NCBI GenBank assembly: GCA_047495785.1
Contig: JBLDXI010000007.1
Span: forward strand, 4,092,001-4,156,000
DNA from: Lepidodermella squamata
Lineage: Eukaryota > Animalia > Gastrotricha
Direction: 5' to 3'
DNA length: 64,000 nucleotides
Part shown: piece by piece, positions 1,279-12,847 of the stretch
Layout: the number at the start of each line of letters is the position of its first letter
How positions within the stretch are numbered: the stretch's first letter is position 1
Program-made: the position numbers and the translations under genes
Notes under the pieces: model-generated
The model's input: only the letters and a program-made list of their open reading frames with translations
Database searches by the model: none
Told to the model about the DNA's origin: nothing

Positions 1279-2400
1279 ATGTCAAAATCAGAGGTGAAAA
1301 CCTACGCACTCGGTGATAAGGATAACATCGATGTTAGCGAGATCATCAAACCCGACAAAACGCGAACTCGCTGGGAGTATTTCATCGAAGCGCCGCAATT
1401 TCTTCAAAACCTTCTCGTGCCACTCATGAACGACAAACGCGACATGCCTATGCTGCATCTCATGTTCAACTTGACAGCCTTCATGCTACCCTACGCCATT
1501 GCCCTCTTCGTAGCCCCGATCAACATCTACTACCACATAGCTGCGGTTATTTATGTGACTCTTAACGTTGCTGTTTTTCTGAAGCGATTCGTCCTATGGA
1601 TGCATTACAGTGCTCACAAGAAGACCTACTCAAAATCTCACCCGCTCGGCCGGTTTCTCAATCACTATTGTACCGTTTTCATGTCTCCAATCTTCGGAAT
1701 TCCGCCTGGTTGTTACCACCTTCACCATGTTGTTATGCACCATTGCGAGAACAATTTATTCCCATACGACGTCAGCAGCACGGAGCCGTACGACCGCAGC
1801 AATTTCCTCCATTTCCTACACTACTTTGTCCGCTACTGGACTGCTCTGTGGATCGAACTGCCGTACTACGCCTTCAAAAAAGGCCGCTACGCCCTCATGT
1901 CTTTCGCCGTGACGTGCGAGATCACGTACCTGAGCTCCGTCTACATGTTGTACCAAATCAATGCAACAGCAACGATTTACGTTGTCATCTTGCCATTCTT
2001 CTTCGCGGCTTACCTGCTGATGTTCGGCAACTTCTCGCAGCACATCTTCATCGACCCAGCTAACCCGAGGTCAAACTACAAGTTGGCGATCAATGTCATC
2101 AATTGCGAGGACAACATGGTGACGTTCAACGATGGCTACCACATCATTCACCACATCAACTCGAAGCTTCACTGGACGGAGCTGCCGGATAAATTTACGG
2201 AAACCTTGGACAAACACCTCGAAGAGGAAGCGTTCATTTTCGACGGCCTTGGCTTCTTCGACGTTGGCGTTCTAGTATTCACGCGACAGTTCAACAAGCT
2301 CGCGAATCATCTCGTGCAACTTGGCGGTAAAAAGCGGTCCAAGGACGAGCTGGTTAAATTGATGAAAGAGCGCCTACAGCCGATTCACTACAAGGGATAA
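1279..2400 (+). CDS. Membrane fatty-acid desaturase/hydroxylase-family protein, intronless CDS, 373 aa
   Basis: Three His boxes (HYSAH, HLHHVVMHH, HIIHH), an additional QH, and several TM segments. The HHxENN...DxSST motif resembles a fungal/protist/bacterial desaturase subfamily (from recall). Possible 5'UTR intron 1194-1250. Confidence 0.85.
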   Translation: MSKSEVKTYALGDKDNIDVSEIIKPDKTRTRWEYFIEAPQFLQNLLVPLMNDKRDMPMLHLMFNLTAFMLPYAIALFVAPINIYYHIAAVIYVTLNVAVFLKRFVLWMHYSAHKKTYSKSHPLGRFLNHYCTVFMSPIFGIPPGCYHLHHVVMHHCENNLFPYDVSSTEPYDRSNFLHFLHYFVRYWTALWIELPYYAFKKGRYALMSFAVTCEITYLSSVYMLYQINATATIYVVILPFFFAAYLLMFGNFSQHIFIDPANPRSNYKLAINVINCEDNMVTFNDGYHIIHHINSKLHWTELPDKFTETLDKHLEEEAFIFDGLGFFDVGVLVFTRQFNKLANHLVQLGGKKRSKDELVKLMKERLQPIHYKG

Positions 2401-3569
2401 GTGGAGCGAATAGTTTAACCTCACTAAAAAACTGTTGCCTATAATTTTATCGAGATCTGTGGTTAAGATTTCTAATTCTCGTTATAGGCGTCCCGTTCTT
2501 TGCCGAGGCTTTCACATTCGATTTACGATATAGGAAATAATGTGGTGTTCAACTTTATCTGTTCGATACATGTTTTCTTCTTACTCTTTCTGCATATTAT
2601 TATATCATTGACGTTTATAGGATTAAATAAATATTTCGTGATTTTAATTCAAATTTTCAGTAATGTGTTTTTGGGCTACTTTGTTAAAACTGATTTTGAA
2701 ACGCATCTGGAACAAAAGTATAAAGTATACACTTTGAACAGCTGCGGATTCTAGTGTAAATCATGGGCATCGATATCATTCAGTAGAGATCGCCCACTAG
2801 CGTGAAAAGGGGGTGTACGCCATGGGCGCCAGATGGTCAGCTGGTTCATCAGAGGCTTGGAGGCCAAGTATAGAAATTATTCGATTCGTTTTTTGCTGGT
2901 TCAGATCACAGTTAGAAAATCTTCCAATTTTTATGGATAGCTCAACGACAAGGGTTTATCTAGACATCTAGCTAAAAAACACCTTGTATCCTCATCTCTT
3001 TATTGCCGGTCGACTTTTTATTCCGTTCTCTCCCTTTTTCATCGTTGTCGACAACAATTCGATATTGGCAAGCAAATTAAGGTGAATTAGAATTCACAAA
3101 TTCACAAATATTAGAAAAGTTAAAGACGATGGCTAGATTCATTAACATGGGCGGAGACGTTGGCAATGAAGGTGTCGTAATTTTCAAAAACATTTTCACG
3201 CCTGCGAACACGGAGAATTTCAGGGCCGTGAATAAAACAGTATTACAACCAAGCTAAACTTTTGGAAAATTTTAAAAACAGTATTTACAACGAAAAATGC
3301 TGTTCAACCGAGGTGGTCGACCACGGTAAAAGCAGAAGTCTCATTGCCAGAGATCGAAGTTTTGGGAAAATATATTAAAGAAAACATTTGGTGACAACTA
3401 TTTCCCTAAGATCAATCGCTTGACGCTGCAATTTAAAACGGTTGTATTCAGATGAAGAGAGAACGGGCAAACCGACGGATTTGCATCCCTGTAAAATAAA
3501 TACCAGAGCTAGATCGACGAAATTTTATTTTTGGAAAAATCACCAATTCGAAATCTGGCTCGCCTTTAG

Positions 3570-4770
3570 TTAGAAAAGGTTCCAGAAACTGGTCGAGCGG
3601 GGTCAGCGGCTTAACGAAGAGCTCCTCGAGGTTGTCGAGAATTGCATTGACCTAGTCTACCCGTAGCAACAATTGCAACTTGTTTCATTAATTATGCAAA
3701 TTCAAATGTTCGAACCAGTGATCAACGTTACCAAGGTATTTAAATTGGAGATAGTTCGAGCGAACAAGAACTGACTTCGAGGAAATAACCGCGCTCAATT
3801 GCAGCTATAGGAATGAATATAGACCACCTGTCGCCGTTCTGTTTTTCTTCACGGATCAACTGCTGAACGCCGTTGTTAGCGCCGGCGTAGGCAGCCGCAC
3901 CATCAAAGCCGCAGGAGGACATGTCGTCGATCGTGAGATTCGAATTGGCCAGCACAACCTTGAGGTCGTCGAACAGCGACAAGGCGGACGTGTCCATAAC
4001 CCGGCTTAGACCCAGGAAAACTTCACATACTTCGCCGTTCTCATCCAAGTATCGACCCACGTGAGAAACTTGCTCGTCTGTAGTTTCATCGCCCATGTAG
4101 GTGAAGGCGCCGTACTCAGCGACTGATTTGTTGATCTTTGAGAAAAAATAGGCGATAATGCAAGAAAAAAGAAATTTTGAAAAATACCTTCGCAATTTCT
4201 GACTTCTTGATAAATTCTCCAAAAGTCTCCAACAGCATGGTGATCGTGCTAGTTGAGAGATAGGTCGCGTTGGCAGGCAGCGACTGAAGCCACTTCAACA
4301 GGTCTGGGCTGATTTCACAGTGAGTAGAAAGCAACGGCATGTAGCGTGAGGAATTTCTTGCACAAATAGGAAGTAGGCGACCACCAGCAGCATCGAAAAA
4401 AGACGCCTTTTAAGTCAACCAATATCCGCTTGGCTTGGGTCAATGCCACGTTAATTGCCGTCAGCTCATTGCCAGCCAGCTTAAAAAAATCAAAATTAAT
4501 ATTAAAAAAAAATTGCTTCGAAATATTGTAAAAATATTGAAAAATACTGACCCCAACTGCTAATTTGGGGTTAGCACTTTTGCCGTGTGTTTTCGCTTTC
4601 TCGGCCAACTTGTTGCGTTTTCGCTTTTCGCACGAAACGGTTACCCAAGTGCCGCCAGAACGACCGTGTCGATTTCCTCCTCTATGTCCAATATATCATG
4701 TGACGTGGGTGCAGCATACGTCTGGGGTAAATATTCCGTTCTCAAACGGCAAGTGAAGTCATTATTCTAA
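3570..4770 (-). mobile_element. Degenerate hAT-family (DUF4371/ZMYM1-like) transposase, 5' half
   Basis: Motifs NATYLS, GDETTD..EQ...RY....EVFLG and GFDGAAAYAG.NNGVQ spread over several frames with short introns and frameshifts. Ends not found, so boundaries are approximate. Confidence 0.7.
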
Positions 4771-5707
4771 CTGCCACTTAGTCAGCTATCCCGTGTCTTA
4801 GCACGAAATCATGTACGGCCAATGAGTATCATGCCGCCGCCCACGAGCTAAATGAACTCTGCTCAATCCATGGGATGTGCGTGGGGAAGGATGTGGAGGA
4901 CCACAGATTTAAACGCACGCCCTTTGCCCGTCAACGTTTGTATTTCGCTCTTTGCCAAGCCTCATCGGCTCAAGGCTCAAGCATCTGTGCGTTTTTCAAG
5001 TTTTTATCAACCATTTCAACTATAAGAAGTGCCTATTTGTGCATAATTATGTGGTATATTTTAACTATTTGTACATAATTTTTGAAATTGAACAGCGTTA
5101 TTTCGCGGTTTTCTTGGTTAGGGTTAGGATTAGTTTTGAAAACAGTTTCTGTGCAAATAGGGGCACTATTTCTGGGCCCATTATTATTTCTGGTAAGCTT
5201 GCGGAGGACGTTTTCAATGGCCGGTTCATTCTTCAGTAATCGAACGATCTATTCGATAGCTGATATATGTTATAACTATCGTCGACATTTTACAAATAAC
5301 GGATTTGAGTGAGAAGTCCAGGGTGCTAACATTTAGTAATGTGAAAATAGCCTTACCCGTAGTCTGTTACAAGTAGATCTTCAGCTAATAACTAAGCCAC
5401 TAGTTTTCGGACCAATTATGCTGAAAAAAATACGTGGATACATAGACCTCAAATTATACTAGTTTGTTCACAAACCATGCTATTTTGGAATGTAGGTAAC
5501 ATAAAAACTGGGCTTTAACACGTTCATTCACCGCCATTAGCACGTGTTGTAATCTAAAATTAACGCTTAACAATAGCAGGTAAAGCGCAACAACCGCCCA
5601 CTGGCAGAATGCCAGAGGATATCCATGGGGAAGGAAGAGGAGGAGAGCGCGTATTTATAGCTTGCGCAGTCTGAGAGACTACAACCGTTGCAAATTCTGT
5701 ACGAAAA

Positions 5708-6822
5708 ATGGCACCCATCGTAGAGACGTACAGTGTCGGCGATCGACAAAATCTCGACATTAAGGACATTATCAAGCCGGATAAAACGACGCAACGAACT
5801 GAATACATCTTCGAGGCTCCGCAGTTCTTCCTAAATCTTCTCGTACCTCTCCTGAGAGACAAACGCGATGTACTGATGATCCACATTATGTTCAACGTCA
5901 GCGTTACCGTCGTACCATTCGCCATTGCGCTCATCCTAGCCCCAGTCAACGGTTACTTCCATATCGCAGCTGTTAGTTACATTTTCCTGCTGTTTGGGGC
6001 CTTTCCTCGCCGATTTCTGCTTTGGCTGCACTACAGCGTTCACAAGGCGACCTATGACAAGAAGAAGTTGATCGGGCGACTTTTGAACGAGTACAACCAC
6101 CACCTCATTTCACCCTTGTTCGGCGTACCACCAGGTGGCTACTATACGCCCATCACATCGTTATGCACCACTGCGAAAATAATTTGTTCCCGACTGATTT
6201 GTCGAGCACGGAACCTTACGACAGGGGAAATTTTCTCCACTTCCTCGTCTACTACCTCCGATATTCAGCTGGAGTCTGGTTCGAATTGCCTTACTATGCG
6301 TTCAAAAAACAGCGATACGCCCTGGCTATGAGGGTTGTTGCTACGCTAGCAATTTATCTCGGCTGCCTGTACAAGTTGTACCAGTTCAACCCGGCTGCGA
6401 CAATTTATTTGTTTATCATTCCGTATTTCATCAACTCTTTCGCGTTGATGCTCGGCAATTTCAGCCAACACATCTTCATCGACCCGGCTGACCCGCAAAA
6501 TACGTACAAATTAGCGATTAATTGCATCAATATTGACGGGCCCATGTACTACGATGGCTACCACATAGTCCATCATTTGAATTCGACGCTGCACTGGTCG
6601 GAGATGCCTGACCGGTTTGAGGCCACGCTGGAAAAATACATCGAGGCGGATTCGGTTATTTTCGATGGCATTGATATTTTCGACATAGCATTCAAGGTTT
6701 TCACGGGGCAGTTTGAAGATCTGGCTCGTCACCTGGTTCAGTTTGGCGACAGAAAGCGAAGCACGGAAGAATTGGTCAGTTTCATGAAGGAACGCCTAAA
6801 GCCTATTCGGCATGAGTTTTAA
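5708..6822 (+). pseudogene. Second desaturase paralogue, frameshifted
   Basis: Colinear with 1279-2400. An extra TA at 6143-6144 (TAC-TA-TAC-GCC-CAT-CAC) breaks the frame just before His box 2; removing it restores GGYYAHHIVMHH. Confidence 0.8.
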
Positions 6823-7839
6823 CAACAAGGCAGCCTCGCTACAGTTATTTATTAGCTATCCAGTGAAATAATAGGTAATAGGAATAAGACTGTTAAATAA
6901 ATCTAAAAATGTAAGTGATCAATAAAGCTACTCTCGGCAGCACGGCCAGCCACTTTAGCTGCTTCTTACGCGTTTTTGCCAAAAGGCGGTGACACTGTTT
7001 GACTTTCAGAGTTGCTCTTGTCATAGTGTATGTTTCCTTGGGCCCTAAGGCCATTGCCTAACTCGATGACATGCGGAATCTTGGAAAAATAAATCGCTGG
7101 AGTAAACTGGTAAAATATACGGTTTAATAAAAAATAAGGCAATTAGGTGAAAGGCAGGGCCGACTAGTTTTACTATTCATCCTTTCATCGCCACCGACTG
7201 CAGTAGAATTTCATTGCCATGACTCTTTCCATTATTATATGTTCACAATGTTTAAATATTAATCAACAACATTAAACAACATTAATAGGTATGTATTTCA
7301 TTCAACTTACTTTTACAACTTCAACTTCTTAGTGTTATCATTTTATAACTTCGTTCACGTAAAATTACTGCTTTTTATTGCACATGTAGCCTATTTTCGA
7401 ATACCGCCAGTTCTTGAACAATTGCATATGTATCGGACCCTTTTTCGGCCGCATTGACTTTTACCGCCTGAGGACATATAAAAAAGCCTGTTGGCTCCTT
7501 CTGCAGCGCTGCCAACGATGTTGCCTAATATGTAAAATCAAAACTTTGGGCATTTTCACTCATTCCTCGAAAAAGTCACAGAAATTTAATCGCCGCAGCC
7601 TTTATTGACGAAGAAAATGACGGTATTTCAATCGAACGTTTTATAGCGCAAATTTTTCGTCATTAATTATGAATCATAGACGCACGTGTATATTGTATAT
7701 ACACTGCACACATGCCTATTCATTGATAATATGGACGCAGCATTGCATCAGTTTTGCTGCGTTATCAGAAATTTTTTATTATCAATTTCCGTACTGGTTA
7801 TTAATCTTATAACATAATTTTAACATTATCCACTTTACA

Positions 7840-9274
7840 ATGGCTCATTCTGCTGTAGAAAAGGCTCTTCTGATTATTGACCTTCAAAACGATTTTGTCT
7901 CGCCCGATGGCCCTTTTGGCAAAACTGCTGTCGACGCGAGCCAAATCGTGGAAAACCTCTCTATGGCCGTGCCAAATTTTCGCAGTGATAACGGGCTGAT
8001 AATTTGGATCAAGTCTCAATACACATGCCAGAATCAGGCGAATCAAGATGCGAGAACAATTATCCTGCAGACCAGTGAAGAATTCGATGGTGTCCCGCCG
8101 AAAGATGAATTTCTATCTGGAACCCACACTTCTTTCCCGTTGTGCGCACCCGGATCATCAGGGGCAGATTTCATCGACGATATTAAGCCGCTAATTCACG
8201 AAAGCGATCGAGTTATTATCAAGACCTTCTACTCCGCTTTTACAAGCACAAATCTAGCCGAAATTCTCGCCAACATCCCCGAGATCCACATCTGCGGTCT
8301 GATGACAAACGTTTGCGTCCTGGCGACTGTGACTGATGCCTACTTTCTTGGCAAGGAGCCAATTTTTGTCTGGACGGATTGTTTGGGCTACCGCAGTGAA
8401 CGGATGCATCGAGTTGCTCTGCAAAAGATGGACAAATTTTACGCAAGACTGGTCACATCGAGCGATTTCCATAACCCGAGTATGGATGGTAAGAAGCCGG
8501 TCCTGTATTACGTGAATGGGTCGATCCCGAACTGGCTAGTGATGATGGCTCTCTATGAGAAGGGAATCGACTTCGCAAAACATCGGCTGAAGGTTTTTCT
8601 CATTTTAAATCGCTATTTCTACAATTAGGTTTTCTTTACAGGTAATGTGTAAGCCGAAGGAAACAAAATCCCCGGAATTTCTGGCAATAAATCCTCGTGG
8701 GAAAACGCCAACCCTAGTCGATTCTGATGGGACGATTGTCTACGAATCTGTCGCGATCCTACACTATCTGGAAACTTTCTACCCTTCAAGCCCTCTTTTA
8801 CCCGATAAAGTCGAGGAAAAAGCAGCCTATTCCGCCGCTATCCAACGAATTCAAGAAGCTGACCATCTTGGCGATGCTTATGAACCTCTTGAAGATGTTG
8901 TTTTCAAAACTCCAAAAGAACTTCAATCTTCTCATGCCGATTTGATCAGATCAACCTTCGCAGCGATTGATACCGAGCTCGAGTTATGGGAAAACTACCT
9001 CCAAAAATCGAATGGATTTGTTGTTGGCGATCGATTCACCTTGGCAGATTGCGCTTTCTACCCGAATCTAGCGTATTTGATTCATCGAGGTCTGGCTTTA
9101 GATGAATCGCGATTTCCGACCTTGATAAAGTACTACAATGCTATCCGGCAGAGGCCTTCAGCTGTGAAATCCCACCCTCGGGGTTGGCGTTCGTGGGGTG
9201 GTCGGGTTAATGTATTCAAAATTGCACGATCCATCGTTGAGTCTTTGCCTAATTACAGCAAAAGAGATCAATAG
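7840..9274 (+). CDS. Isochorismatase (cysteine hydrolase)-glutathione S-transferase fusion, 461 aa; exons 7840-8592 and 8642-9274
   Basis: Catalytic D (IIDLQND), K (IKTFYSAF) and C (TNVCV). A 49-bp GT-AG intron 8593-8641 joins HRLK|VMCK in frame. GST motifs INPRGKTPTL, YES and FTLADC. Confidence 0.85.
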
Positions 9275-9340
9275 CTTGCTTATTCAAGAATTTTCAGAAT
9301 AAATTTGTTGTTGTCTATTTTAGAAATTTATAATTTTATA

Positions 9341-10186
9341 ATGGATCCCAGTTCTATGTTTCAAGGCTTGGATGTGTCTGTATTTGGATCGGGGGATAGT
9401 TTCCTGATAAAAAATGTCTTCCCTCCCGAAGAAGCTGATGCGCTGTTCCAGCAAATCCGCGATGAAGTTCAGTGGAACAAAATGCTACAACGCGGCAGTG
9501 AAGTGCCTCGATTGATCGCGATTCAGGGCACACTAACTGAGCAAGACGAGCCTATCTACCGCCATCCAGCCGACGAACAGCCTGCCTTGGTAAAATGGAC
9601 GCCTGCAGCTCTCAAAATTCGAGATCGAATCAGTGATTTGTTGAAACAAGAGTTGAACCACGCGTTGATTCAGTACTATCGAAACGGCTCAGACAACATT
9701 GGCGAGCATTCGGATAAAACGCTGGATATCAAACTCAATTCGAACATTGTCAACTTCAGTCTGGGAGCGACAAGGCGAATGCATTTGAAGAGCAAGACCA
9801 AAAACGAGCCGCATCAAGTTGTGAGGATGACGCATAACTCTCTGTTCATTCTGGGCTGGCAAACGAATCGCGAATGGCTGCATTCGATACGGCAGGATAA
9901 CCGACCCGATTCTGTTAAATCGAAAGATGAATTGGCTTTCTCAGGCCAGCGAATCTCGCTGACGTTGCGAACTATAGCGACGTTTCGTGATCTGAGGAGT
10001 GGCCGCCTCTATGGGCAGGGTGCTAAGATGACAGAAAAGCTGGAACAATGGCCCGAGGATGTCGACGATAGTCTACAAATGTTGAAGGCATTTTCAGCCG
10101 AAAATCACTCATCGAATGAGTTCGATTGGAATCGTTTTTATGGTTGCGGCTTTGATGCTGTTAATTTCAAAGAACTCAACAGATGA
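9341..10186 (+). CDS. AlkB-type 2OG-Fe(II) dioxygenase
   Basis: HxD (EHSD), distal H (WLH) and RISLTLR motifs; YRHPADEQP and NHALIQYYR. AATAAA at 10192. The first ATG (9341) is taken as the start. Confidence 0.85.
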   Translation: MDPSSMFQGLDVSVFGSGDSFLIKNVFPPEEADALFQQIRDEVQWNKMLQRGSEVPRLIAIQGTLTEQDEPIYRHPADEQPALVKWTPAALKIRDRISDLLKQELNHALIQYYRNGSDNIGEHSDKTLDIKLNSNIVNFSLGATRRMHLKSKTKNEPHQVVRMTHNSLFILGWQTNREWLHSIRQDNRPDSVKSKDELAFSGQRISLTLRTIATFRDLRSGRLYGQGAKMTEKLEQWPEDVDDSLQMLKAFSAENHSSNEFDWNRFYGCGFDAVNFKELNR

Positions 10187-10379
10187 ACTCGAATAAAAAA
10201 TAATCGCTGACTTTTGAGAAATAGTTTATTGAATTTTCAACGTTGCATGTCTAATATTATTTCAAGCAGTGGATCAACCTGGAGATCGGATTGAAACAGC
10301 TTAATGCTTTACTGTCACTTGATCATGTTCCGTCTCTGAATTATTAGATTAGTGAAAATTCGGTGCAGCAGTGTAACCG

Positions 10380-12847
10380 CTAGACCCAAAGGCGCTCGCA
10401 AAAGCAGTAGAGGCGAGAAGAGCAGTCCCTCGTAAAAATAGTCCCATTCTTCATAGCAAGGCCTGAAAAAGGAAAACAGTTAAACCCAGCCAATCTCGAA
10501 TTCGGTCACTTACAATGGCCTGCTGCAAGATTTGGAGGATTCTCAAAGGGTGGATACTGATTGGTCGAATTGAACATGTCTCCGGTCAGCCATCTGAAGG
10601 AGTCGAGGCTTTCACGGCGACCCCCAATGAAAACGACTTTCTCCTCTTCGCGAGGCCATAGGGCTAATAACGCCTTCAAAGATGCGTCAACTGCGGAAGT
10701 TTTAACAACAGGCAGCCGTCGACCTTTAGCCTGGCAAAAGGCTGCATGAGCCGCAAAGTCACCAGAACTCGCCGTGATTTCGAAGACCGCGTCCTATTAG
10801 ATAATAACAAGAGACTGCTATTATTTTCGAGTCATGATGCGAGAAAATGCACAGACATTGTCAGGATACTGGCATGCGACCAGTGCTTTTGTGGCGTTGC
10901 AATCCGCATCGGAGATCATCGATTGGGTCATCGTAAGACCTAATCAAACAAAATATATAAATTATATCTTCACGATTAAATTTTCGAAATTCCTCATAAA
11001 TTCTACTTTCTCTCAAGCTCGCTCTTGCAGGGTACTTAAAACGTTGGCTACGTCCAACTCACATGCGCCAGTTCCACGCGGCTCGTCATATGACCAGAAA
11101 TCTTCGGTCGTGTTGACGATGGACCCGTCCAGCCATCGAAAAACCGCCGAGGCTCCTATCCAGATTTCAGCGTTCTGTGCGAAATCTGGTAGAGTGCTAC
11201 TAGCCGCTAAGATCTCATCCTGAGACTGTATGATAGCAAGCCGCTGGTTTCCTTGGCGAACACAGCCTGCCACAGCTGAAAGCCATTGGCCATTTCCTCC
11301 AAAATAATAACGACCTGCGAATGTAAATAATTGCATGATAACCCACGAATCAATCAGTTGCAGTCAACCGACCTGATTGGCATTGGTTGCCGCTGTAAGC
11401 AGCAGAACATTTGCAAGTTCCAGAAGCCAGCAGTAGGGCACCATTATTCTGGCACTGAGCCTGTTTCCGGATAATGAGCCATTTACCACTATGAGTCGGT
11501 ATAAACTAACTTTTTGCGAAATATTTGCTTGACATGCGGCATAGTTTTCAGCAAATGTCGTTGCAGCAGAAAAGATAGCGAGCTAGTAGTTGACAAATTA
11601 TTCAAATGTGATGAGGAATAAAGATGCCGAATCGTACAGTCTGTGTGTCGGACGGGCATACGCTGTAGCAAATTTCTCCTGCAGATGCTAGACACTTGGC
11701 AGCTCGCTGTAAAGAATAGAAACAACGATATAGTGCACCTTAAATCTCAAAATGAAGAATTTAAAAAAATTAGACTTTAGTAGGCGAAGAAATTACCCAA
11801 CGAAGGCAGTTTGCTTCATTTCTGTAGGTCCCTCGCGACAAGTCTGATATGCCAGAACCGCAACCAGCCGAAGCGAGCCGGCAGCCGACGAAATTATATG
11901 TTGTCGCATCGAAGCAGCGAATATGGGGCTTTTCATCATCGGGAACTTGGACTATGACAGAGCACAACGATGAGAGCAACTCTATTATGGCGTACTCTTA
12001 CCAGCTCCATTCAAGCATGAGTTGAGATTGGCGAACAGCGAATTACCAGCAGTCTTTAATTTTTAAGCTAGGAATTACATTTTCTTTTTTTAAAACCTTA
12101 CCGTGTTCGCGGGGCATGTAAATTTGCCATCAACCTTTGGAACACACGTAACAGTTTGGCCATTGGAGCTACATCGCTGGAATTGTTGGTTCTATAAGTA
12201 CAGATTTAAAAATTTCGACGATTCGCAATGAAACTATCTGCTAAAATCACCCCAAAATTGTTCACTGCGTCCCAGCACGTTTTGAGATTGTTGCTCAGAA
12301 ATACGCTTCCTCGGTATAAGCCAAGCTGTTGCGACGGAAAACGATTGAATTAAGGATGACTGGGATAACAAGCGGCATACAGTGATTTCATCAGTCTCGC
12401 ACTTATCCGCCCCAGTTGTGCACCTGGGTGTGATGGCTGCATATTTGTAGCACATTTTTCCGTTCTAAGTCATGCGAAAAATAGTCACAATTCGCGTATT
12501 CATGACGACAGTTTACCCCGCGAATGCATGCCGTTGAATCTTTAGCAGCATAGCCGACCTTTTCAATAAAAACACATGAAAAATGGTACGAAAAATTAAC
12601 CTTCGAAGCAACTAAAATGTGATAAATAGAATTTAGACCGAGTTTATTGAGACATGAGAGCGAAGAGTTTTCCAAAAACTAGTCGATTTATATATACCTG
12701 ATATTCAGTTAAGGTTCGGCAGGTGGGAGCATCATTGCGGCATTGAACAAATCTGTTATCGAACTGAGAAAAGCAGCGCAGCCAATCGTAGCCGTTCGCT
12801 ACATGGCTCAAAAATGTGAATAGCAATAAGCAACGGTAATGCCTCAT
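10380..12847 (-). CDS. Secreted multi-exon protein: signal peptide, 4-Cys repeats, EGF, two C-type-lectin-like domains (copy 1)
   Basis: Signal MRHYRCLLLFTFLSHVANG; CTLD motifs RLAII, WIGA..FRWLDGS, FIGG...FRWL; last exon ends CFCERLWV*. Exons inferred from GT-AG sites and alignment with copy 2. Confidence 0.75.

What the first reader, a model, noticed from the sequence alone, without database searches (positions are those of the whole stretch)
7840..10200. Isochorismatase-GST and AlkB dioxygenase separated by a single in-frame TAG: operon, readthrough or alternative splice
Seen: the GST stop (CAA-TAG-C, 9272-9274) is the only stop between the two ORFs, which share a frame. Only 66 nt separate it from ATG 9341, and they contain TTTTCAG (9291-9297), AATAAA (9298-9303), a U-rich tract and a second acceptor TTTTAG (ending 9323). 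A weak-donor intron 9241-9297 would also fuse them in frame. Recalled, not verified: ascomycetes encode isochorismatase, GST-like and 2OG-Fe(II) domains in one protein with very similar AlkB motifs. Inference: a horizontally acquired three-domain gene caught in fission, expressed as a trans-spliced dicistron and possibly still as a fusion. All catalytic residues are intact; the substrate is unknown.
Basis: partly seen in the sequence, partly recalled or inferred. Interest (0 to 1): 0.75.

Follow-up and report, generated by a model that had tools for sequence, protein, structure and literature searches.

The report
Two linked genes, one enzyme module
Two neighbouring genes of a tiny freshwater animal (very probably the gastrotrich Lepidodermella squamata) encode three enzyme parts that fungi, protists and bacteria often make as one protein; the single stop codon between them is the normal end of the first gene, not a gene caught splitting.

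Summary
An isochorismatase-GST gene (7840-9274, one 49-nt intron) and an AlkB-like 2OG/Fe(II) oxygenase gene (9341-10186) share a strand and a frame, 66 nt apart, with TAG 9272-9274 the only stop between them. The TAG is present in independent RNA and DNA runs. The "fission in progress / readthrough / alternative splice" reading is not supported. TAG sits at the natural C-terminus shared with the separate IG proteins of bdelloid rotifers and fungi and with the GST gene or domain of bacteria. The spacer is 82% A+T, carries indels between strains, has no readthrough motif or structure, and its open frame is a 3-6% coincidence. cDNA contigs splice out the real intron but show no junction or contig across 9327-9351. 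Gene 1 RNA stops about 9326, 20-23 nt after AATAAA. AlkB RNA starts about 9352. The recalled three-domain proteins are real: ascomycetes and Myxococcota have I-A-G, protists have I-G-A, and bacteria have an I-A gene followed by a G gene. Among animals I found the family only in bdelloids (unlinked genes) and here, plus one wasp record. A non-animal origin is therefore likely. Operon-style expression is plausible but unproven, because no spliced leader was seen. The substrate is unknown. I found no earlier checked report of this pair in the scan.

The parts
7793..7839 (+). 5' untranslated part of gene 1 as far as the cDNA contigs reach
   Evidence: The first X1 cDNA contig begins at 7793. No AG precedes it, so this is not an acceptor site. 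The true start may lie further upstream.
7840..8592 (+). Gene 1 exon 1: isochorismatase-like cysteine hydrolase domain plus the first ~35 residues of the GST N-terminal domain
   Evidence: Pfam PF00857 3e-33. D14 (7879), K128 (8221) and C159 (8314) align to the RutB triad. Single copy in the genome.
8593..8641 (+). 49-nt GT..AG intron inside the GST N-terminal domain
   Evidence: Spliced out in an X1 cDNA contig (joint 8590>8640, cut +2). Absent at this place in the bdelloid-type IG genes, where the two halves abut.
8642..9274 (+). Gene 1 exon 2: rest of the GST domain, ending in TAG 9272-9274
   Evidence: Pfam GST_N_2/GST_C. The nearest solved structure is a rho-class GST, 6e-29. The C-terminus aligns with the natural ends of the IG proteins and of the bacterial GST gene or domain.
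9275..9340 (+). 66-nt spacer, 82% A+T, open in the shared frame
   Evidence: Composition and shuffles. X1 differs here by one substitution and two indels in 52 nt, against 2 substitutions in 281 coding nt. No RNA structure (z = 0.06).
9298..9303 (+). AATAAA poly(A) signal of gene 1
   Evidence: Read from the sequence. The X1 contig of gene 1 ends at 9326, 20-23 nt downstream. No A-tail is visible in the contig, so the site is inferred.
9318..9323 (+). TTTTAG, candidate splice acceptor 17 nt before ATG 9341
   Evidence: Sequence only. No X1 coverage of 9327-9351, so no sign that an mRNA starts here.
9349..9351 (+). CAG immediately before the observed 5' end of the AlkB RNA (9352-9354): candidate acceptor, or an initiator-like CCAGTTC
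   Evidence: An X1 contig starts at 9352 with 20 foreign letters in front. These letters are absent from the window and the genome. From my own knowledge they equal the reverse complement of the SMART/ISPCR cDNA primer.
9341..10186 (+). Gene 2: AlkB-like Fe(II)/2-oxoglutarate dioxygenase, intronless, stop TGA 10184-10186. The start is ATG 9341, or 9356 if the mRNA begins at 9352
   Evidence: Pfam PF13532 2e-34. H123 (9707), D125 (9713), H181 (9881), R204 (9950) and R210 (9968) are invariant in the family. AlphaFold model pLDDT 92, best match human ALKBH2 with TM 0.84. Single copy.
10192..10197 (+). AATAAA, candidate poly(A) signal of gene 2
   Evidence: Sequence only. The X1 contigs do not cover 10020-10271.

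Best explanation
These are two separate, co-oriented, single-copy genes that together encode one conserved three-enzyme module. Gene 1 encodes an isochorismatase-like cysteine amidohydrolase fused to a glutathione transferase (IG). Gene 2 encodes an ALKBH2/3-like Fe(II)/2-oxoglutarate dioxygenase (A). TAG 9272 is the ordinary, ancient end of the IG protein, and the shared reading frame across the 66-nt spacer is coincidence. The mature mRNAs are separate: gene 1 is cleaved and polyadenylated about 9323-9326 after AATAAA, and the AlkB mRNA begins about 9352. The module is of non-animal origin. It is shared with bdelloid rotifers, was domesticated here (intron gained in IG), and is still physically linked here, whereas in bdelloids the two genes have drifted apart. 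How the AlkB 5' end is made remains open: it could be spliced-leader trans-splicing of a co-transcript at AG 9351 or a promoter of its own in the spacer. Inferred function, at low confidence: the three activities act on one substrate. The dioxygenase would remove an N-alkyl group as an aldehyde, the GST part would supply glutathione chemistry, and the hydrolase would open an amide or ureido bond.
For: Shown: domains and intact active sites. Shown: the real intron is spliced in cDNA, while no joint or contig crosses 9327-9351; the depth arithmetic of the bin 9278-9411 fits zero cover there. Shown: the TAG is present in an RNA run and a DNA run. The IG proteins of bdelloid type (448-456 aa) and fungi, and the bacterial GST gene or domain, end within about 6-9 residues of the window's stop. 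Bdelloid AlkB proteins (~300 aa) start at a similar position. In bdelloid genomes IG lies next to an aldo-keto reductase and A lies next to WD40/integrin genes, so the two are unlinked. The GST tree groups the window with the bdelloid IG clade (SH-aLRT 87). A clade of the window AlkB plus bdelloid AlkB is not rejected (AU p = 0.46). The triad is a self-contained unit elsewhere. In about 30 genomes of Myxococcota, Planctomycetota and cyanobacteria it is an I-A ORF followed at once by a G ORF, or one IAG ORF, with unrelated flanks. In ascomycetes it is a single I-A-G protein, and in protists a single I-G-A ORF, once with an added glutathione-dependent formaldehyde-activating (GFA) domain. The spacer is non-coding in make-up and in its variation between strains.
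Against: All RNA evidence comes from assembled contigs of one cDNA run, which drop rare forms. A 100-nt hole inside exon 2 (8891-8990) shows that holes can be technical. No poly(A) tail is visible at 9326. The two indels in the spacer of the X1 strain cancel out (+1, -1), so the frame stays open there too. CAA-UAG-C is a comparatively leaky stop context (own knowledge). The AlkB tree backbone is unresolved, so a common origin with the bdelloid genes is not proven. A joint function of the three enzymes is inferred only from fusion and linkage.
Confidence: 0.75

Rival explanations
1. Spliced-leader operon. Both genes are copied as one precursor from the gene 1 promoter. The precursor is cut at the gene 1 poly(A) site, and a leader is trans-spliced at AG 9351 (or 9323) to give the AlkB mRNA. 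This concerns the mode of expression and is compatible with the best explanation.
For: Only about 25 nt separate the end of the gene 1 contig (9326) from the start of the AlkB contig (9352), and an AG directly precedes 9352. A start at 9352 leaves 4 nt before ATG 9356. That is too short for an ordinary capped leader but normal if a spliced leader supplies the 5' UTR (own knowledge). Earlier scan notes report leader trans-splicing and operon-like pairs in this genome, one with an acceptor 28 nt after the upstream poly(A) site. These notes are leads that I did not test.
Against: No leader was seen. The only foreign letters at the AlkB 5' end are a cDNA adaptor. No contig bridges the spacer. The strongest-looking acceptor (9323) shows no use. 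Gene 1 itself shows no leader at 7793.
Confidence: 0.4
2. Independent promoter. The AlkB gene has its own start site at about 9350-9354, with core elements inside the AT-rich spacer (TATAA at 9329-9333 and 9337-9341, and initiator-like CCAGTTC at 9348-9354).
For: The dominant cDNA path begins at 9352-9354 directly next to library adaptor and without a leader. The motifs are read from the sequence.
Against: TATAA-like words are expected by chance in DNA that is 82% A+T. The adaptor is in the wrong orientation for a standard cap-switch junction, so it does not prove a capped end. A 2-6-nt 5' UTR is unusual in animals. There is almost no room for a promoter outside gene 1.
Confidence: 0.3
3. Recent fission. 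A single iso-GST-AlkB gene was split lately by a nonsense mutation, which would explain the shared frame and the single stop.
For: Same frame with one stop. The I-G-A order exists as a single ORF in protists. The frame stays open in the X1 strain despite two indels.
Against: The stop is at the conserved natural end of IG proteins, which are separate genes in bdelloids at 52-61% identity. The protist linkers are 100-160 residues and leave no trace here. The spacer is 82% A+T with a poly(A) signal and tolerates indels. Chance alone gives 3-6%.
Confidence: 0.05
4. Functional stop-codon readthrough or alternative splicing gives a minor three-domain fusion protein.
For: In-frame layout. A +4 C and an upstream CAA favour leakiness (own knowledge). 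A GT at 9241 could pair with AG 9297 or AG 9351 in frame.
Against: The gene 1 mRNA appears to end before the AlkB ORF. No joint appears at these sites although the genuine intron is seen. There is no UAG-CARYYA motif and no structure after the stop. The donor GAG|GTCTTT is weak.
Confidence: 0.04
5. Contaminant DNA or an assembly artefact.
For: The published assembly came from amplified DNA of single animals and needed decontamination.
Against: The genes lie 4.1 Mb into a long contig among animal genes. They carry a spliceosomal intron confirmed in an independent 2015 cDNA run of a slightly different strain. They are only 52-62% identical to any database relative.
Confidence: 0.01

Closest known systems
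Human ALKBH2 / ALKBH3 and E. coli AlkB (direct-reversal nucleic-acid demethylases)
   Same: Same Pfam family. The same HxD...H iron triad and RxxxxxR 2-oxoglutarate site. The predicted fold superposes on ALKBH2 (TM 0.84 by target, 25-27% identity), then ALKBH3, then AlkB.
   Different: It belongs to a separate subfamily with its own invariant motifs (YRHPADEQP, NHALIQYY) and a conserved C-terminal extension of about 60 residues. It has no NCBIfam AlkB match. It is habitually fused or linked to an isochorismatase-like hydrolase and a GST. The substrate is unknown.
Three-domain isochorismatase / AlkB-like / GST proteins of ascomycetes (e.g. Choiromyces venosus RPA96604.1, Acarospora MCJ1365387.1) and Myxococcota (MBK06281.1 cluster)
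   Same: The same three domains, with 42-49% (AlkB) and 26-44% (GST) identity to the window.
   Different: One polypeptide in the order I-A-G, which in fungi has a ~200-residue linker. The window has the order I-G | A in two genes.
Protist single-ORF I-G-A proteins (Diplonema ambulator EP01059_P004568; unnamed contigs L018, L019)
   Same: The same domain order as the window's gene pair.
   Different: Uninterrupted ORFs with 100-160-residue linkers, one with an extra N-terminal GFA domain. They are not specially close to the window in either tree.
Bdelloid rotifer IG and AlkB-like genes (Adineta, Rotaria, Didymodactylos)
   Same: The closest relatives of both window genes (52-59% and 54-62% identity). 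The same gene boundaries, with IG and A as separate proteins.
   Different: The two genes are unlinked in bdelloids. IG is intronless there. The window keeps them 66 nt apart.
Spliced-leader-resolved operons of nematodes, tunicates, rotifers and flatworms
   Same: Same-strand genes with a poly(A) signal followed within tens of bases by an AG before the next start codon.
   Different: No leader and no polycistronic RNA was seen at this pair.

Membership tests
AlkB-like dioxygenases (Pfam 2OG-FeII_Oxy_2, PF13532) | Profile match above the curated threshold | tested here: met
   119.8 bits against a cut-off of 31.2.
AlkB-like dioxygenases (Pfam 2OG-FeII_Oxy_2, PF13532) | Fe(II) ligands HxD...H and the 2-oxoglutarate-binding RxxxxxR | tested here: met
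   H123, D125, H181, R204 and R210 are invariant in a 16-sequence family alignment.
AlkB-like dioxygenases (Pfam 2OG-FeII_Oxy_2, PF13532) | Double-stranded beta-helix fold of the ALKBH2/AlkB type | tested here: met
   Model pLDDT 92. Foldseek best match is ALKBH2, E 3e-17, TM 0.84.
E. coli-type AlkB proper (NCBIfam NF011930) or an animal ALKBH1-8 orthologue | Equivalog-level similarity | tested here: not met
   No NCBIfam hit at E<=0.001. Only 21-27% identity to ALKBH2/3. The nearest relatives are rotifer, fungal, protist and bacterial.
AlkB-like dioxygenases | Oxidative demethylation of nucleic-acid bases | not testable with these tools
   Needs an enzyme assay.
Isochorismatase-like cysteine hydrolases (PF00857) | Profile match and the Asp-Lys-Cys triad | tested here: met
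   115.7 bits against 27. D14, K128 and C159 align with RutB D24, K133 and C166 (the RutB residue numbers are partly own knowledge).
RutB / nicotinamidase PncA / biuret hydrolase (specific isochorismatase-family enzymes) | Equivalog score | tested here: not met
   RutB 49 bits against 378, BiuH 36 against 370, PncA 35 against 174.
Cytosolic glutathione transferases | Thioredoxin-like N-domain plus helical C-domain | tested here: met
   GST_N_2, GST_N_3 and GST_C are all above threshold. The nearest solved structure is a rho-class GST, 6e-29. The first ~35 residues of the domain lie in exon 1.
Cytosolic glutathione transferases | Catalytic Ser/Tyr/Cys near the N-terminus of the domain | tested here: inconclusive
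   A Ser (S228, codon 8521) sits in YYVNGS after the first strand. I did not align it to a structure.
Spliced-leader-resolved operon | Same-strand genes with a very short gap, and an upstream poly(A) signal followed by an acceptor | tested here: met
   66 nt from stop to ATG. AATAAA at 9298, AG at 9323 and at 9351.
Spliced-leader-resolved operon | Leader on the downstream mRNA | tested here: not met
   The only 5' end seen (9352) carries cDNA adaptor letters, not a leader. This rests on contigs of one run, so it is weak negative evidence.
Spliced-leader-resolved operon | Polycistronic precursor RNA | tested here: inconclusive
   No contig covers 9327-9351. Contigs drop rare forms, and precursors are rare in poly(A) RNA.
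Programmed stop-codon readthrough | An mRNA that contains both ORFs, plus a stimulatory context or structure | tested here: not met
   No spanning contig. The bases after UAG are CUUGCU, not CARYYA. The fold z-score is 0.06.
Single-chain I/G/A three-domain proteins | All three domains in one uninterrupted ORF or one spliced mRNA | tested here: not met
   The TAG is confirmed in RNA and DNA, and no junction removes it.

The most novel reading that the evidence does not exclude
A foreign three-enzyme pathway was taken up by an ancestor of gastrotrichs and/or rotifers. In the gastrotrich it is held together as a two-gene spliced-leader operon, so that linkage replaces the protein fusion used by fungi, protists and bacteria. 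The I/G/A triad itself would be an undescribed cross-kingdom pathway in which an ALKBH2-like oxygenase removes an N-alkyl group as an aldehyde, glutathione chemistry (GST, in one protist also a GFA domain) handles the product, and a RutB/nicotinamidase-like hydrolase opens the de-alkylated amide.
Probability: 0.25. Interest if true: 0.6.

Novelty: new member of a known kind. Interest (0 to 1): 0.4.

Why it matters
The gene pair is a natural 'Rosetta stone'. The same three enzyme domains are fused in every order (I-A-G, I-G-A, IA+G, IG+A) in bacteria, fungi, protists and two phyla of microscopic animals. This points to one shared but still unknown substrate for an ALKBH2-like oxygenase subfamily, and I found no paper describing it. 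For the gastrotrich it adds a well-documented case of a probably foreign gene set that is expressed, has gained an intron and has stayed linked. It also offers a clean test locus (a 25-nt gap between two RNA ends) for whether this phylum resolves operons by trans-splicing. It does not show a gene in the act of splitting, nor a readthrough switch.

Tried and rejected
1. The 20 loose letters before 9352 are not a leader. They are absent from the window and the whole genome. From my own knowledge they match the reverse complement of the SMART/ISPCR cDNA primer. Their orientation is not that of a normal cap-switch junction, so I call this neither a cap site nor a leader site.
2. A bdelloid spliced-leader sequence recalled from memory has no match in the genome at up to 2 mismatches. 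This is uninformative.
3. Complex prediction with exon 1, exon 2 and AlkB as three chains gave no verdict (score 0.00). It is evidence neither for nor against binding.
4. The flanks of the bacterial IA+G module hold no conserved further gene: glucuronyl esterase, Sel1, DUF454, a methyltransferase, TetR, NHL and LRR appear in different genomes. There is therefore no pathway hint from context.
5. NCBIfam gave no equivalog.
6. Three literature searches for the domain combination, and one for AlkB in bdelloid gene transfer, found nothing relevant.
7. The AlkB phylogeny does not resolve the donor, because the backbone is a polytomy.
8. No paralogue of the AlkB gene exists in the genome, and the only other isochorismatase matches are distant.
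9. Each exon was used by reference. For the word search I used the 271-codon open frame 7813-8625, so that ~450-residue relatives fell inside the length filter.
Full report
WHAT IS THERE. Gene 1 starts at ATG 7840 and has one 49-nt GT..AG intron (8593-8641). It ends at TAG 9272-9274. Gene 2 runs from ATG 9341 (a second in-frame ATG lies at 9356) to TGA 10184-10186. Both are in the same frame, and the 66-nt spacer has no further stop. Pfam finds an Isochorismatase domain (3e-33) followed by GST N- and C-domains in gene 1, and 2OG-FeII_Oxy_2 (2e-34) in gene 2. The hydrolase triad D14/K128/C159 aligns with that of RutB. The oxygenase keeps H123, D125, H181, R204 and R210, which are invariant across the family. 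An AlphaFold model of the oxygenase is confident (pLDDT 92) and superposes best on human ALKBH2, then ALKBH3, then E. coli AlkB. About 60 further C-terminal residues are conserved in the subfamily and are not covered by those matches.

WHOSE GENOME. The assembly has 121.2 Mb in 151 contigs, and the window has about 42-43% G+C. The published Lepidodermella squamata assembly has 122 Mb, 157 contigs and 43% G+C (PMC11660948). Earlier scan notes reached the same name. I take the organism to be this gastrotrich, with high but not complete certainty. Both genes are single-copy and lie 4.1 Mb into a long contig among animal genes.

RNA EVIDENCE. Two public runs hold the stretch, and I laid both on 7000-11000. 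Run X1 is cDNA. Its contigs lack the 49-nt intron of gene 1 and two introns of the convergent minus-strand gene downstream. X1 comes from a slightly different strain, with a few substitutions per kb.
- The TAG is present in X1 (contig 8991-9326) and in the DNA run X2 (contig 8823-10942), so it is not an error.
- X1 covers gene 1 from 7793 to 9326 and gene 2 from 9352 onwards. The mean depth of the bin 9278-9411 (77) is what two contigs of depth ~93 and ~85 give if nothing covers 9327-9351.
- The gene 1 contig therefore ends 20-23 nt after AATAAA (9298-9303). This is the expected place for cleavage, although no A-tail is visible.
- The gene 2 contig begins at 9352 with 20 foreign letters in front. 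They are absent from the genome. From my own knowledge they are the reverse complement of the SMART/ISPCR cDNA primer, and the next two genomic letters (TT) complete that primer. They mark the end of cDNA molecules, not a spliced leader, and their orientation is not that of a standard cap junction.
- No joint is reported at 9240/9298 or anywhere else in the spacer.
- Caveats: these are contigs of one run and rare forms are lost. A 100-nt hole inside exon 2 (8891-8990, next to a fold-back artefact) shows that holes can be technical.

IS THE SHARED FRAME MEANINGFUL? The spacer is 82% A+T. Shuffles of it stay open in a given frame in 9-12% of trials, and 18% of equally AT-rich 66-nt windows nearby are open. 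With the 1/3 chance of a shared frame, this is a 3-6% event per gene pair. Between X1 and the window the spacer carries one substitution and two indels in 52 nt, against two substitutions in the last 281 coding nt, so it evolves as non-coding DNA. The indels do cancel (+1/-1), which is weak support for frame preservation at best. The bases after the stop (CUUGCU) do not fit the UAG-CARYYA readthrough motif, and the RNA after the stop folds no better than shuffles (z = 0.06).

RELATIVES AND THE AGE OF THE SPLIT.
- The closest AlkB-like proteins (54-62% identity) are stand-alone ~300-residue proteins of bdelloid rotifers (Adineta, Rotaria, Didymodactylos) and of bdelloid-like metagenome contigs.
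- The closest IG proteins (51-55% identity over exon 1; 57-59% over exon 2) are 446-456-residue isochorismatase-GST proteins of the same kind of source, including Didymodactylos.
- In those genomes the AlkB-like gene lies beside WD40 and integrin genes, and the IG gene lies beside an aldo-keto reductase. tblastn finds no trace of the partner within the flanks. The bdelloid IG genes have no intron where the window has one.
- The window's IG protein ends within about 6-9 residues of the ends of the bdelloid and fungal IG proteins and of the bacterial GST gene or domain. In the protist fusions the chain simply continues.
- The GST tree joins the window to the bdelloid IG clade (SH-aLRT 87). The AlkB tree is a polytomy in which a window-plus-bdelloid clade is not rejected (AU p = 0.46).
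- So 'IG and A as two proteins' is the shared, old state of these animal genes. The TAG is the natural end of IG. A gene 'caught in fission' is not supported.

THE THREE-DOMAIN MODULE IS REAL AND WIDESPREAD. A search of 1.84 billion cluster representatives with the AlkB-like protein gave 534 hits below 1e-30. More than half of the top 150 are multi-domain proteins.
- By BLAST and Pfam the common long form is isochorismatase - linker - AlkB-like - GST (Pfam on a sample), at 881-1035 residues in the four named examples. Named examples are the ascomycetes Acarospora, Choiromyces, Rhizina and Pyronema.
- The window's order, I-G-A, occurs as one uninterrupted ORF in Diplonema ambulator and in two unnamed eukaryote contigs. 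One of these adds an N-terminal glutathione-dependent formaldehyde-activating (GFA) domain.
- In bacteria (Myxococcota including Sorangium, Planctomycetota, and cyanobacteria such as Chamaesiphon and Hyella) an I-A ORF is followed at once by a GST ORF in another frame, or all three are one ORF. The flanking genes are not conserved.
- The three activities therefore form a self-contained unit whose parts are fused or linked in every permutation.
- None of the parts reaches an NCBIfam equivalog score, and I found no paper on the combination.
- Among named animals only bdelloids and one wasp record appear. The nearest ESM Atlas clusters are fungal, bacterial and diatom. A non-animal origin is likely. 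The donor, and whether gastrotrichs and rotifers share one uptake, stay open.

HOW IT MOST LIKELY WORKS.
- Shown: two genes, two kinds of mature RNA ends, and intact active sites.
- Inferred: IG and A are made as separate proteins and act on one substrate. The inference rests on their fusion and linkage elsewhere.
- The oxygenase is ALKBH2/3-like, so oxidative removal of an N-methyl or N-alkyl group as an aldehyde is the most likely chemistry. The GST, and in one protist the GFA domain, point to glutathione handling of a product. The hydrolase is nearest to RutB and nicotinamidase and would open an amide or ureido bond. This is a low-confidence proposal, and the substrate is unknown.
- Expression. 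The two RNA ends are only ~25 nt apart, the 5' end follows an AG, and it leaves 4 nt before ATG 9356. This fits a leader-supplied 5' UTR and the operon-like pairs that earlier notes report for this genome (not tested by me). But no leader was seen here, so a promoter of its own in the spacer remains a real alternative.
- My odds: separate proteins as the main products about 0.9; co-transcription with trans-splicing about 0.4; own promoter about 0.3; functional fusion by readthrough or splicing below 0.05.

VERDICT. Fission in progress, readthrough and alternative splicing are not supported. The operon reading is open. The finding is an ordinary tightly linked gene pair in structure. Its interest lies in the cross-kingdom, undescribed three-enzyme module and in a clean test locus for trans-splicing in gastrotrichs. 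The spliced exon 1 + exon 2 protein was never joined for any search or fold.

Noticed in passing
window 1279-2400 and 5708-6822 (+): Two paralogous fatty-acid-desaturase-like genes (Pfam FA_desaturase 6e-17 and 1e-13) lie upstream on the same strand as the IG and AlkB genes. The first is one intronless 373-codon ORF. The second is split over two overlapping frames (5708-6331 and 6163-6822), which means a short intron or a frameshift. Their origin was not examined.
   Followed up: partly
L018:6001-9414: An unnamed protist-like contig (3.3 Mb, ENA) encodes a single 1137-residue ORF with four domains: GFA (glutathione-dependent formaldehyde-activating enzyme), isochorismatase, GST and AlkB-like. 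The added formaldehyde-handling domain is the best hint that the oxygenase releases formaldehyde.
   Followed up: partly
L020-L049 (for example L047, Sorangium cellulosum So ce56, 3416-5583): In about 30 genomes of Myxococcota, Planctomycetota and cyanobacteria an isochorismatase-AlkB-like ORF is followed within ~10-50 nt by a GST ORF in another frame. The flanks are not conserved. I found no description of this two-gene module in the literature.
   Followed up: partly
P0121 (MMETSP transcript, 826 aa): A protist transcript has the order AlkB-like - isochorismatase - second, very divergent AlkB-like domain. Its first domain is 52% identical to the window's AlkB-like protein.
   Followed up: no
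window 8794-8890 and 8891-8990: A contig of cDNA run X1 folds back on the opposite strand at 8794/8890, and the next 100 nt of exon 2 have no cover. This is most likely a cDNA or assembly artefact, and it shows that holes in this run are not all biological.
   Followed up: no
window 7939-9311: The 2015 cDNA run differs from the assembly by scattered substitutions (for example T>A at codon 9119 and I>V at codon 9221) and by indels in the spacer. The cultures sequenced under this species name are probably different strains or cryptic species.
   Followed up: no
window 10272-10942 (-): A convergent minus-strand gene starts its 3' end ~90 nt after the AlkB stop. Two of its introns (10462-10512 and 10793-10855) are spliced out in cDNA. 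It was not identified.
   Followed up: no
P0064 (Copidosoma floridanum LOC106637438): A parasitoid wasp record holds a stand-alone member of this AlkB-like subfamily (51% identity). It is the only named non-rotifer animal hit. Whether it is a real insect gene or a contaminant was not checked.
   Followed up: no
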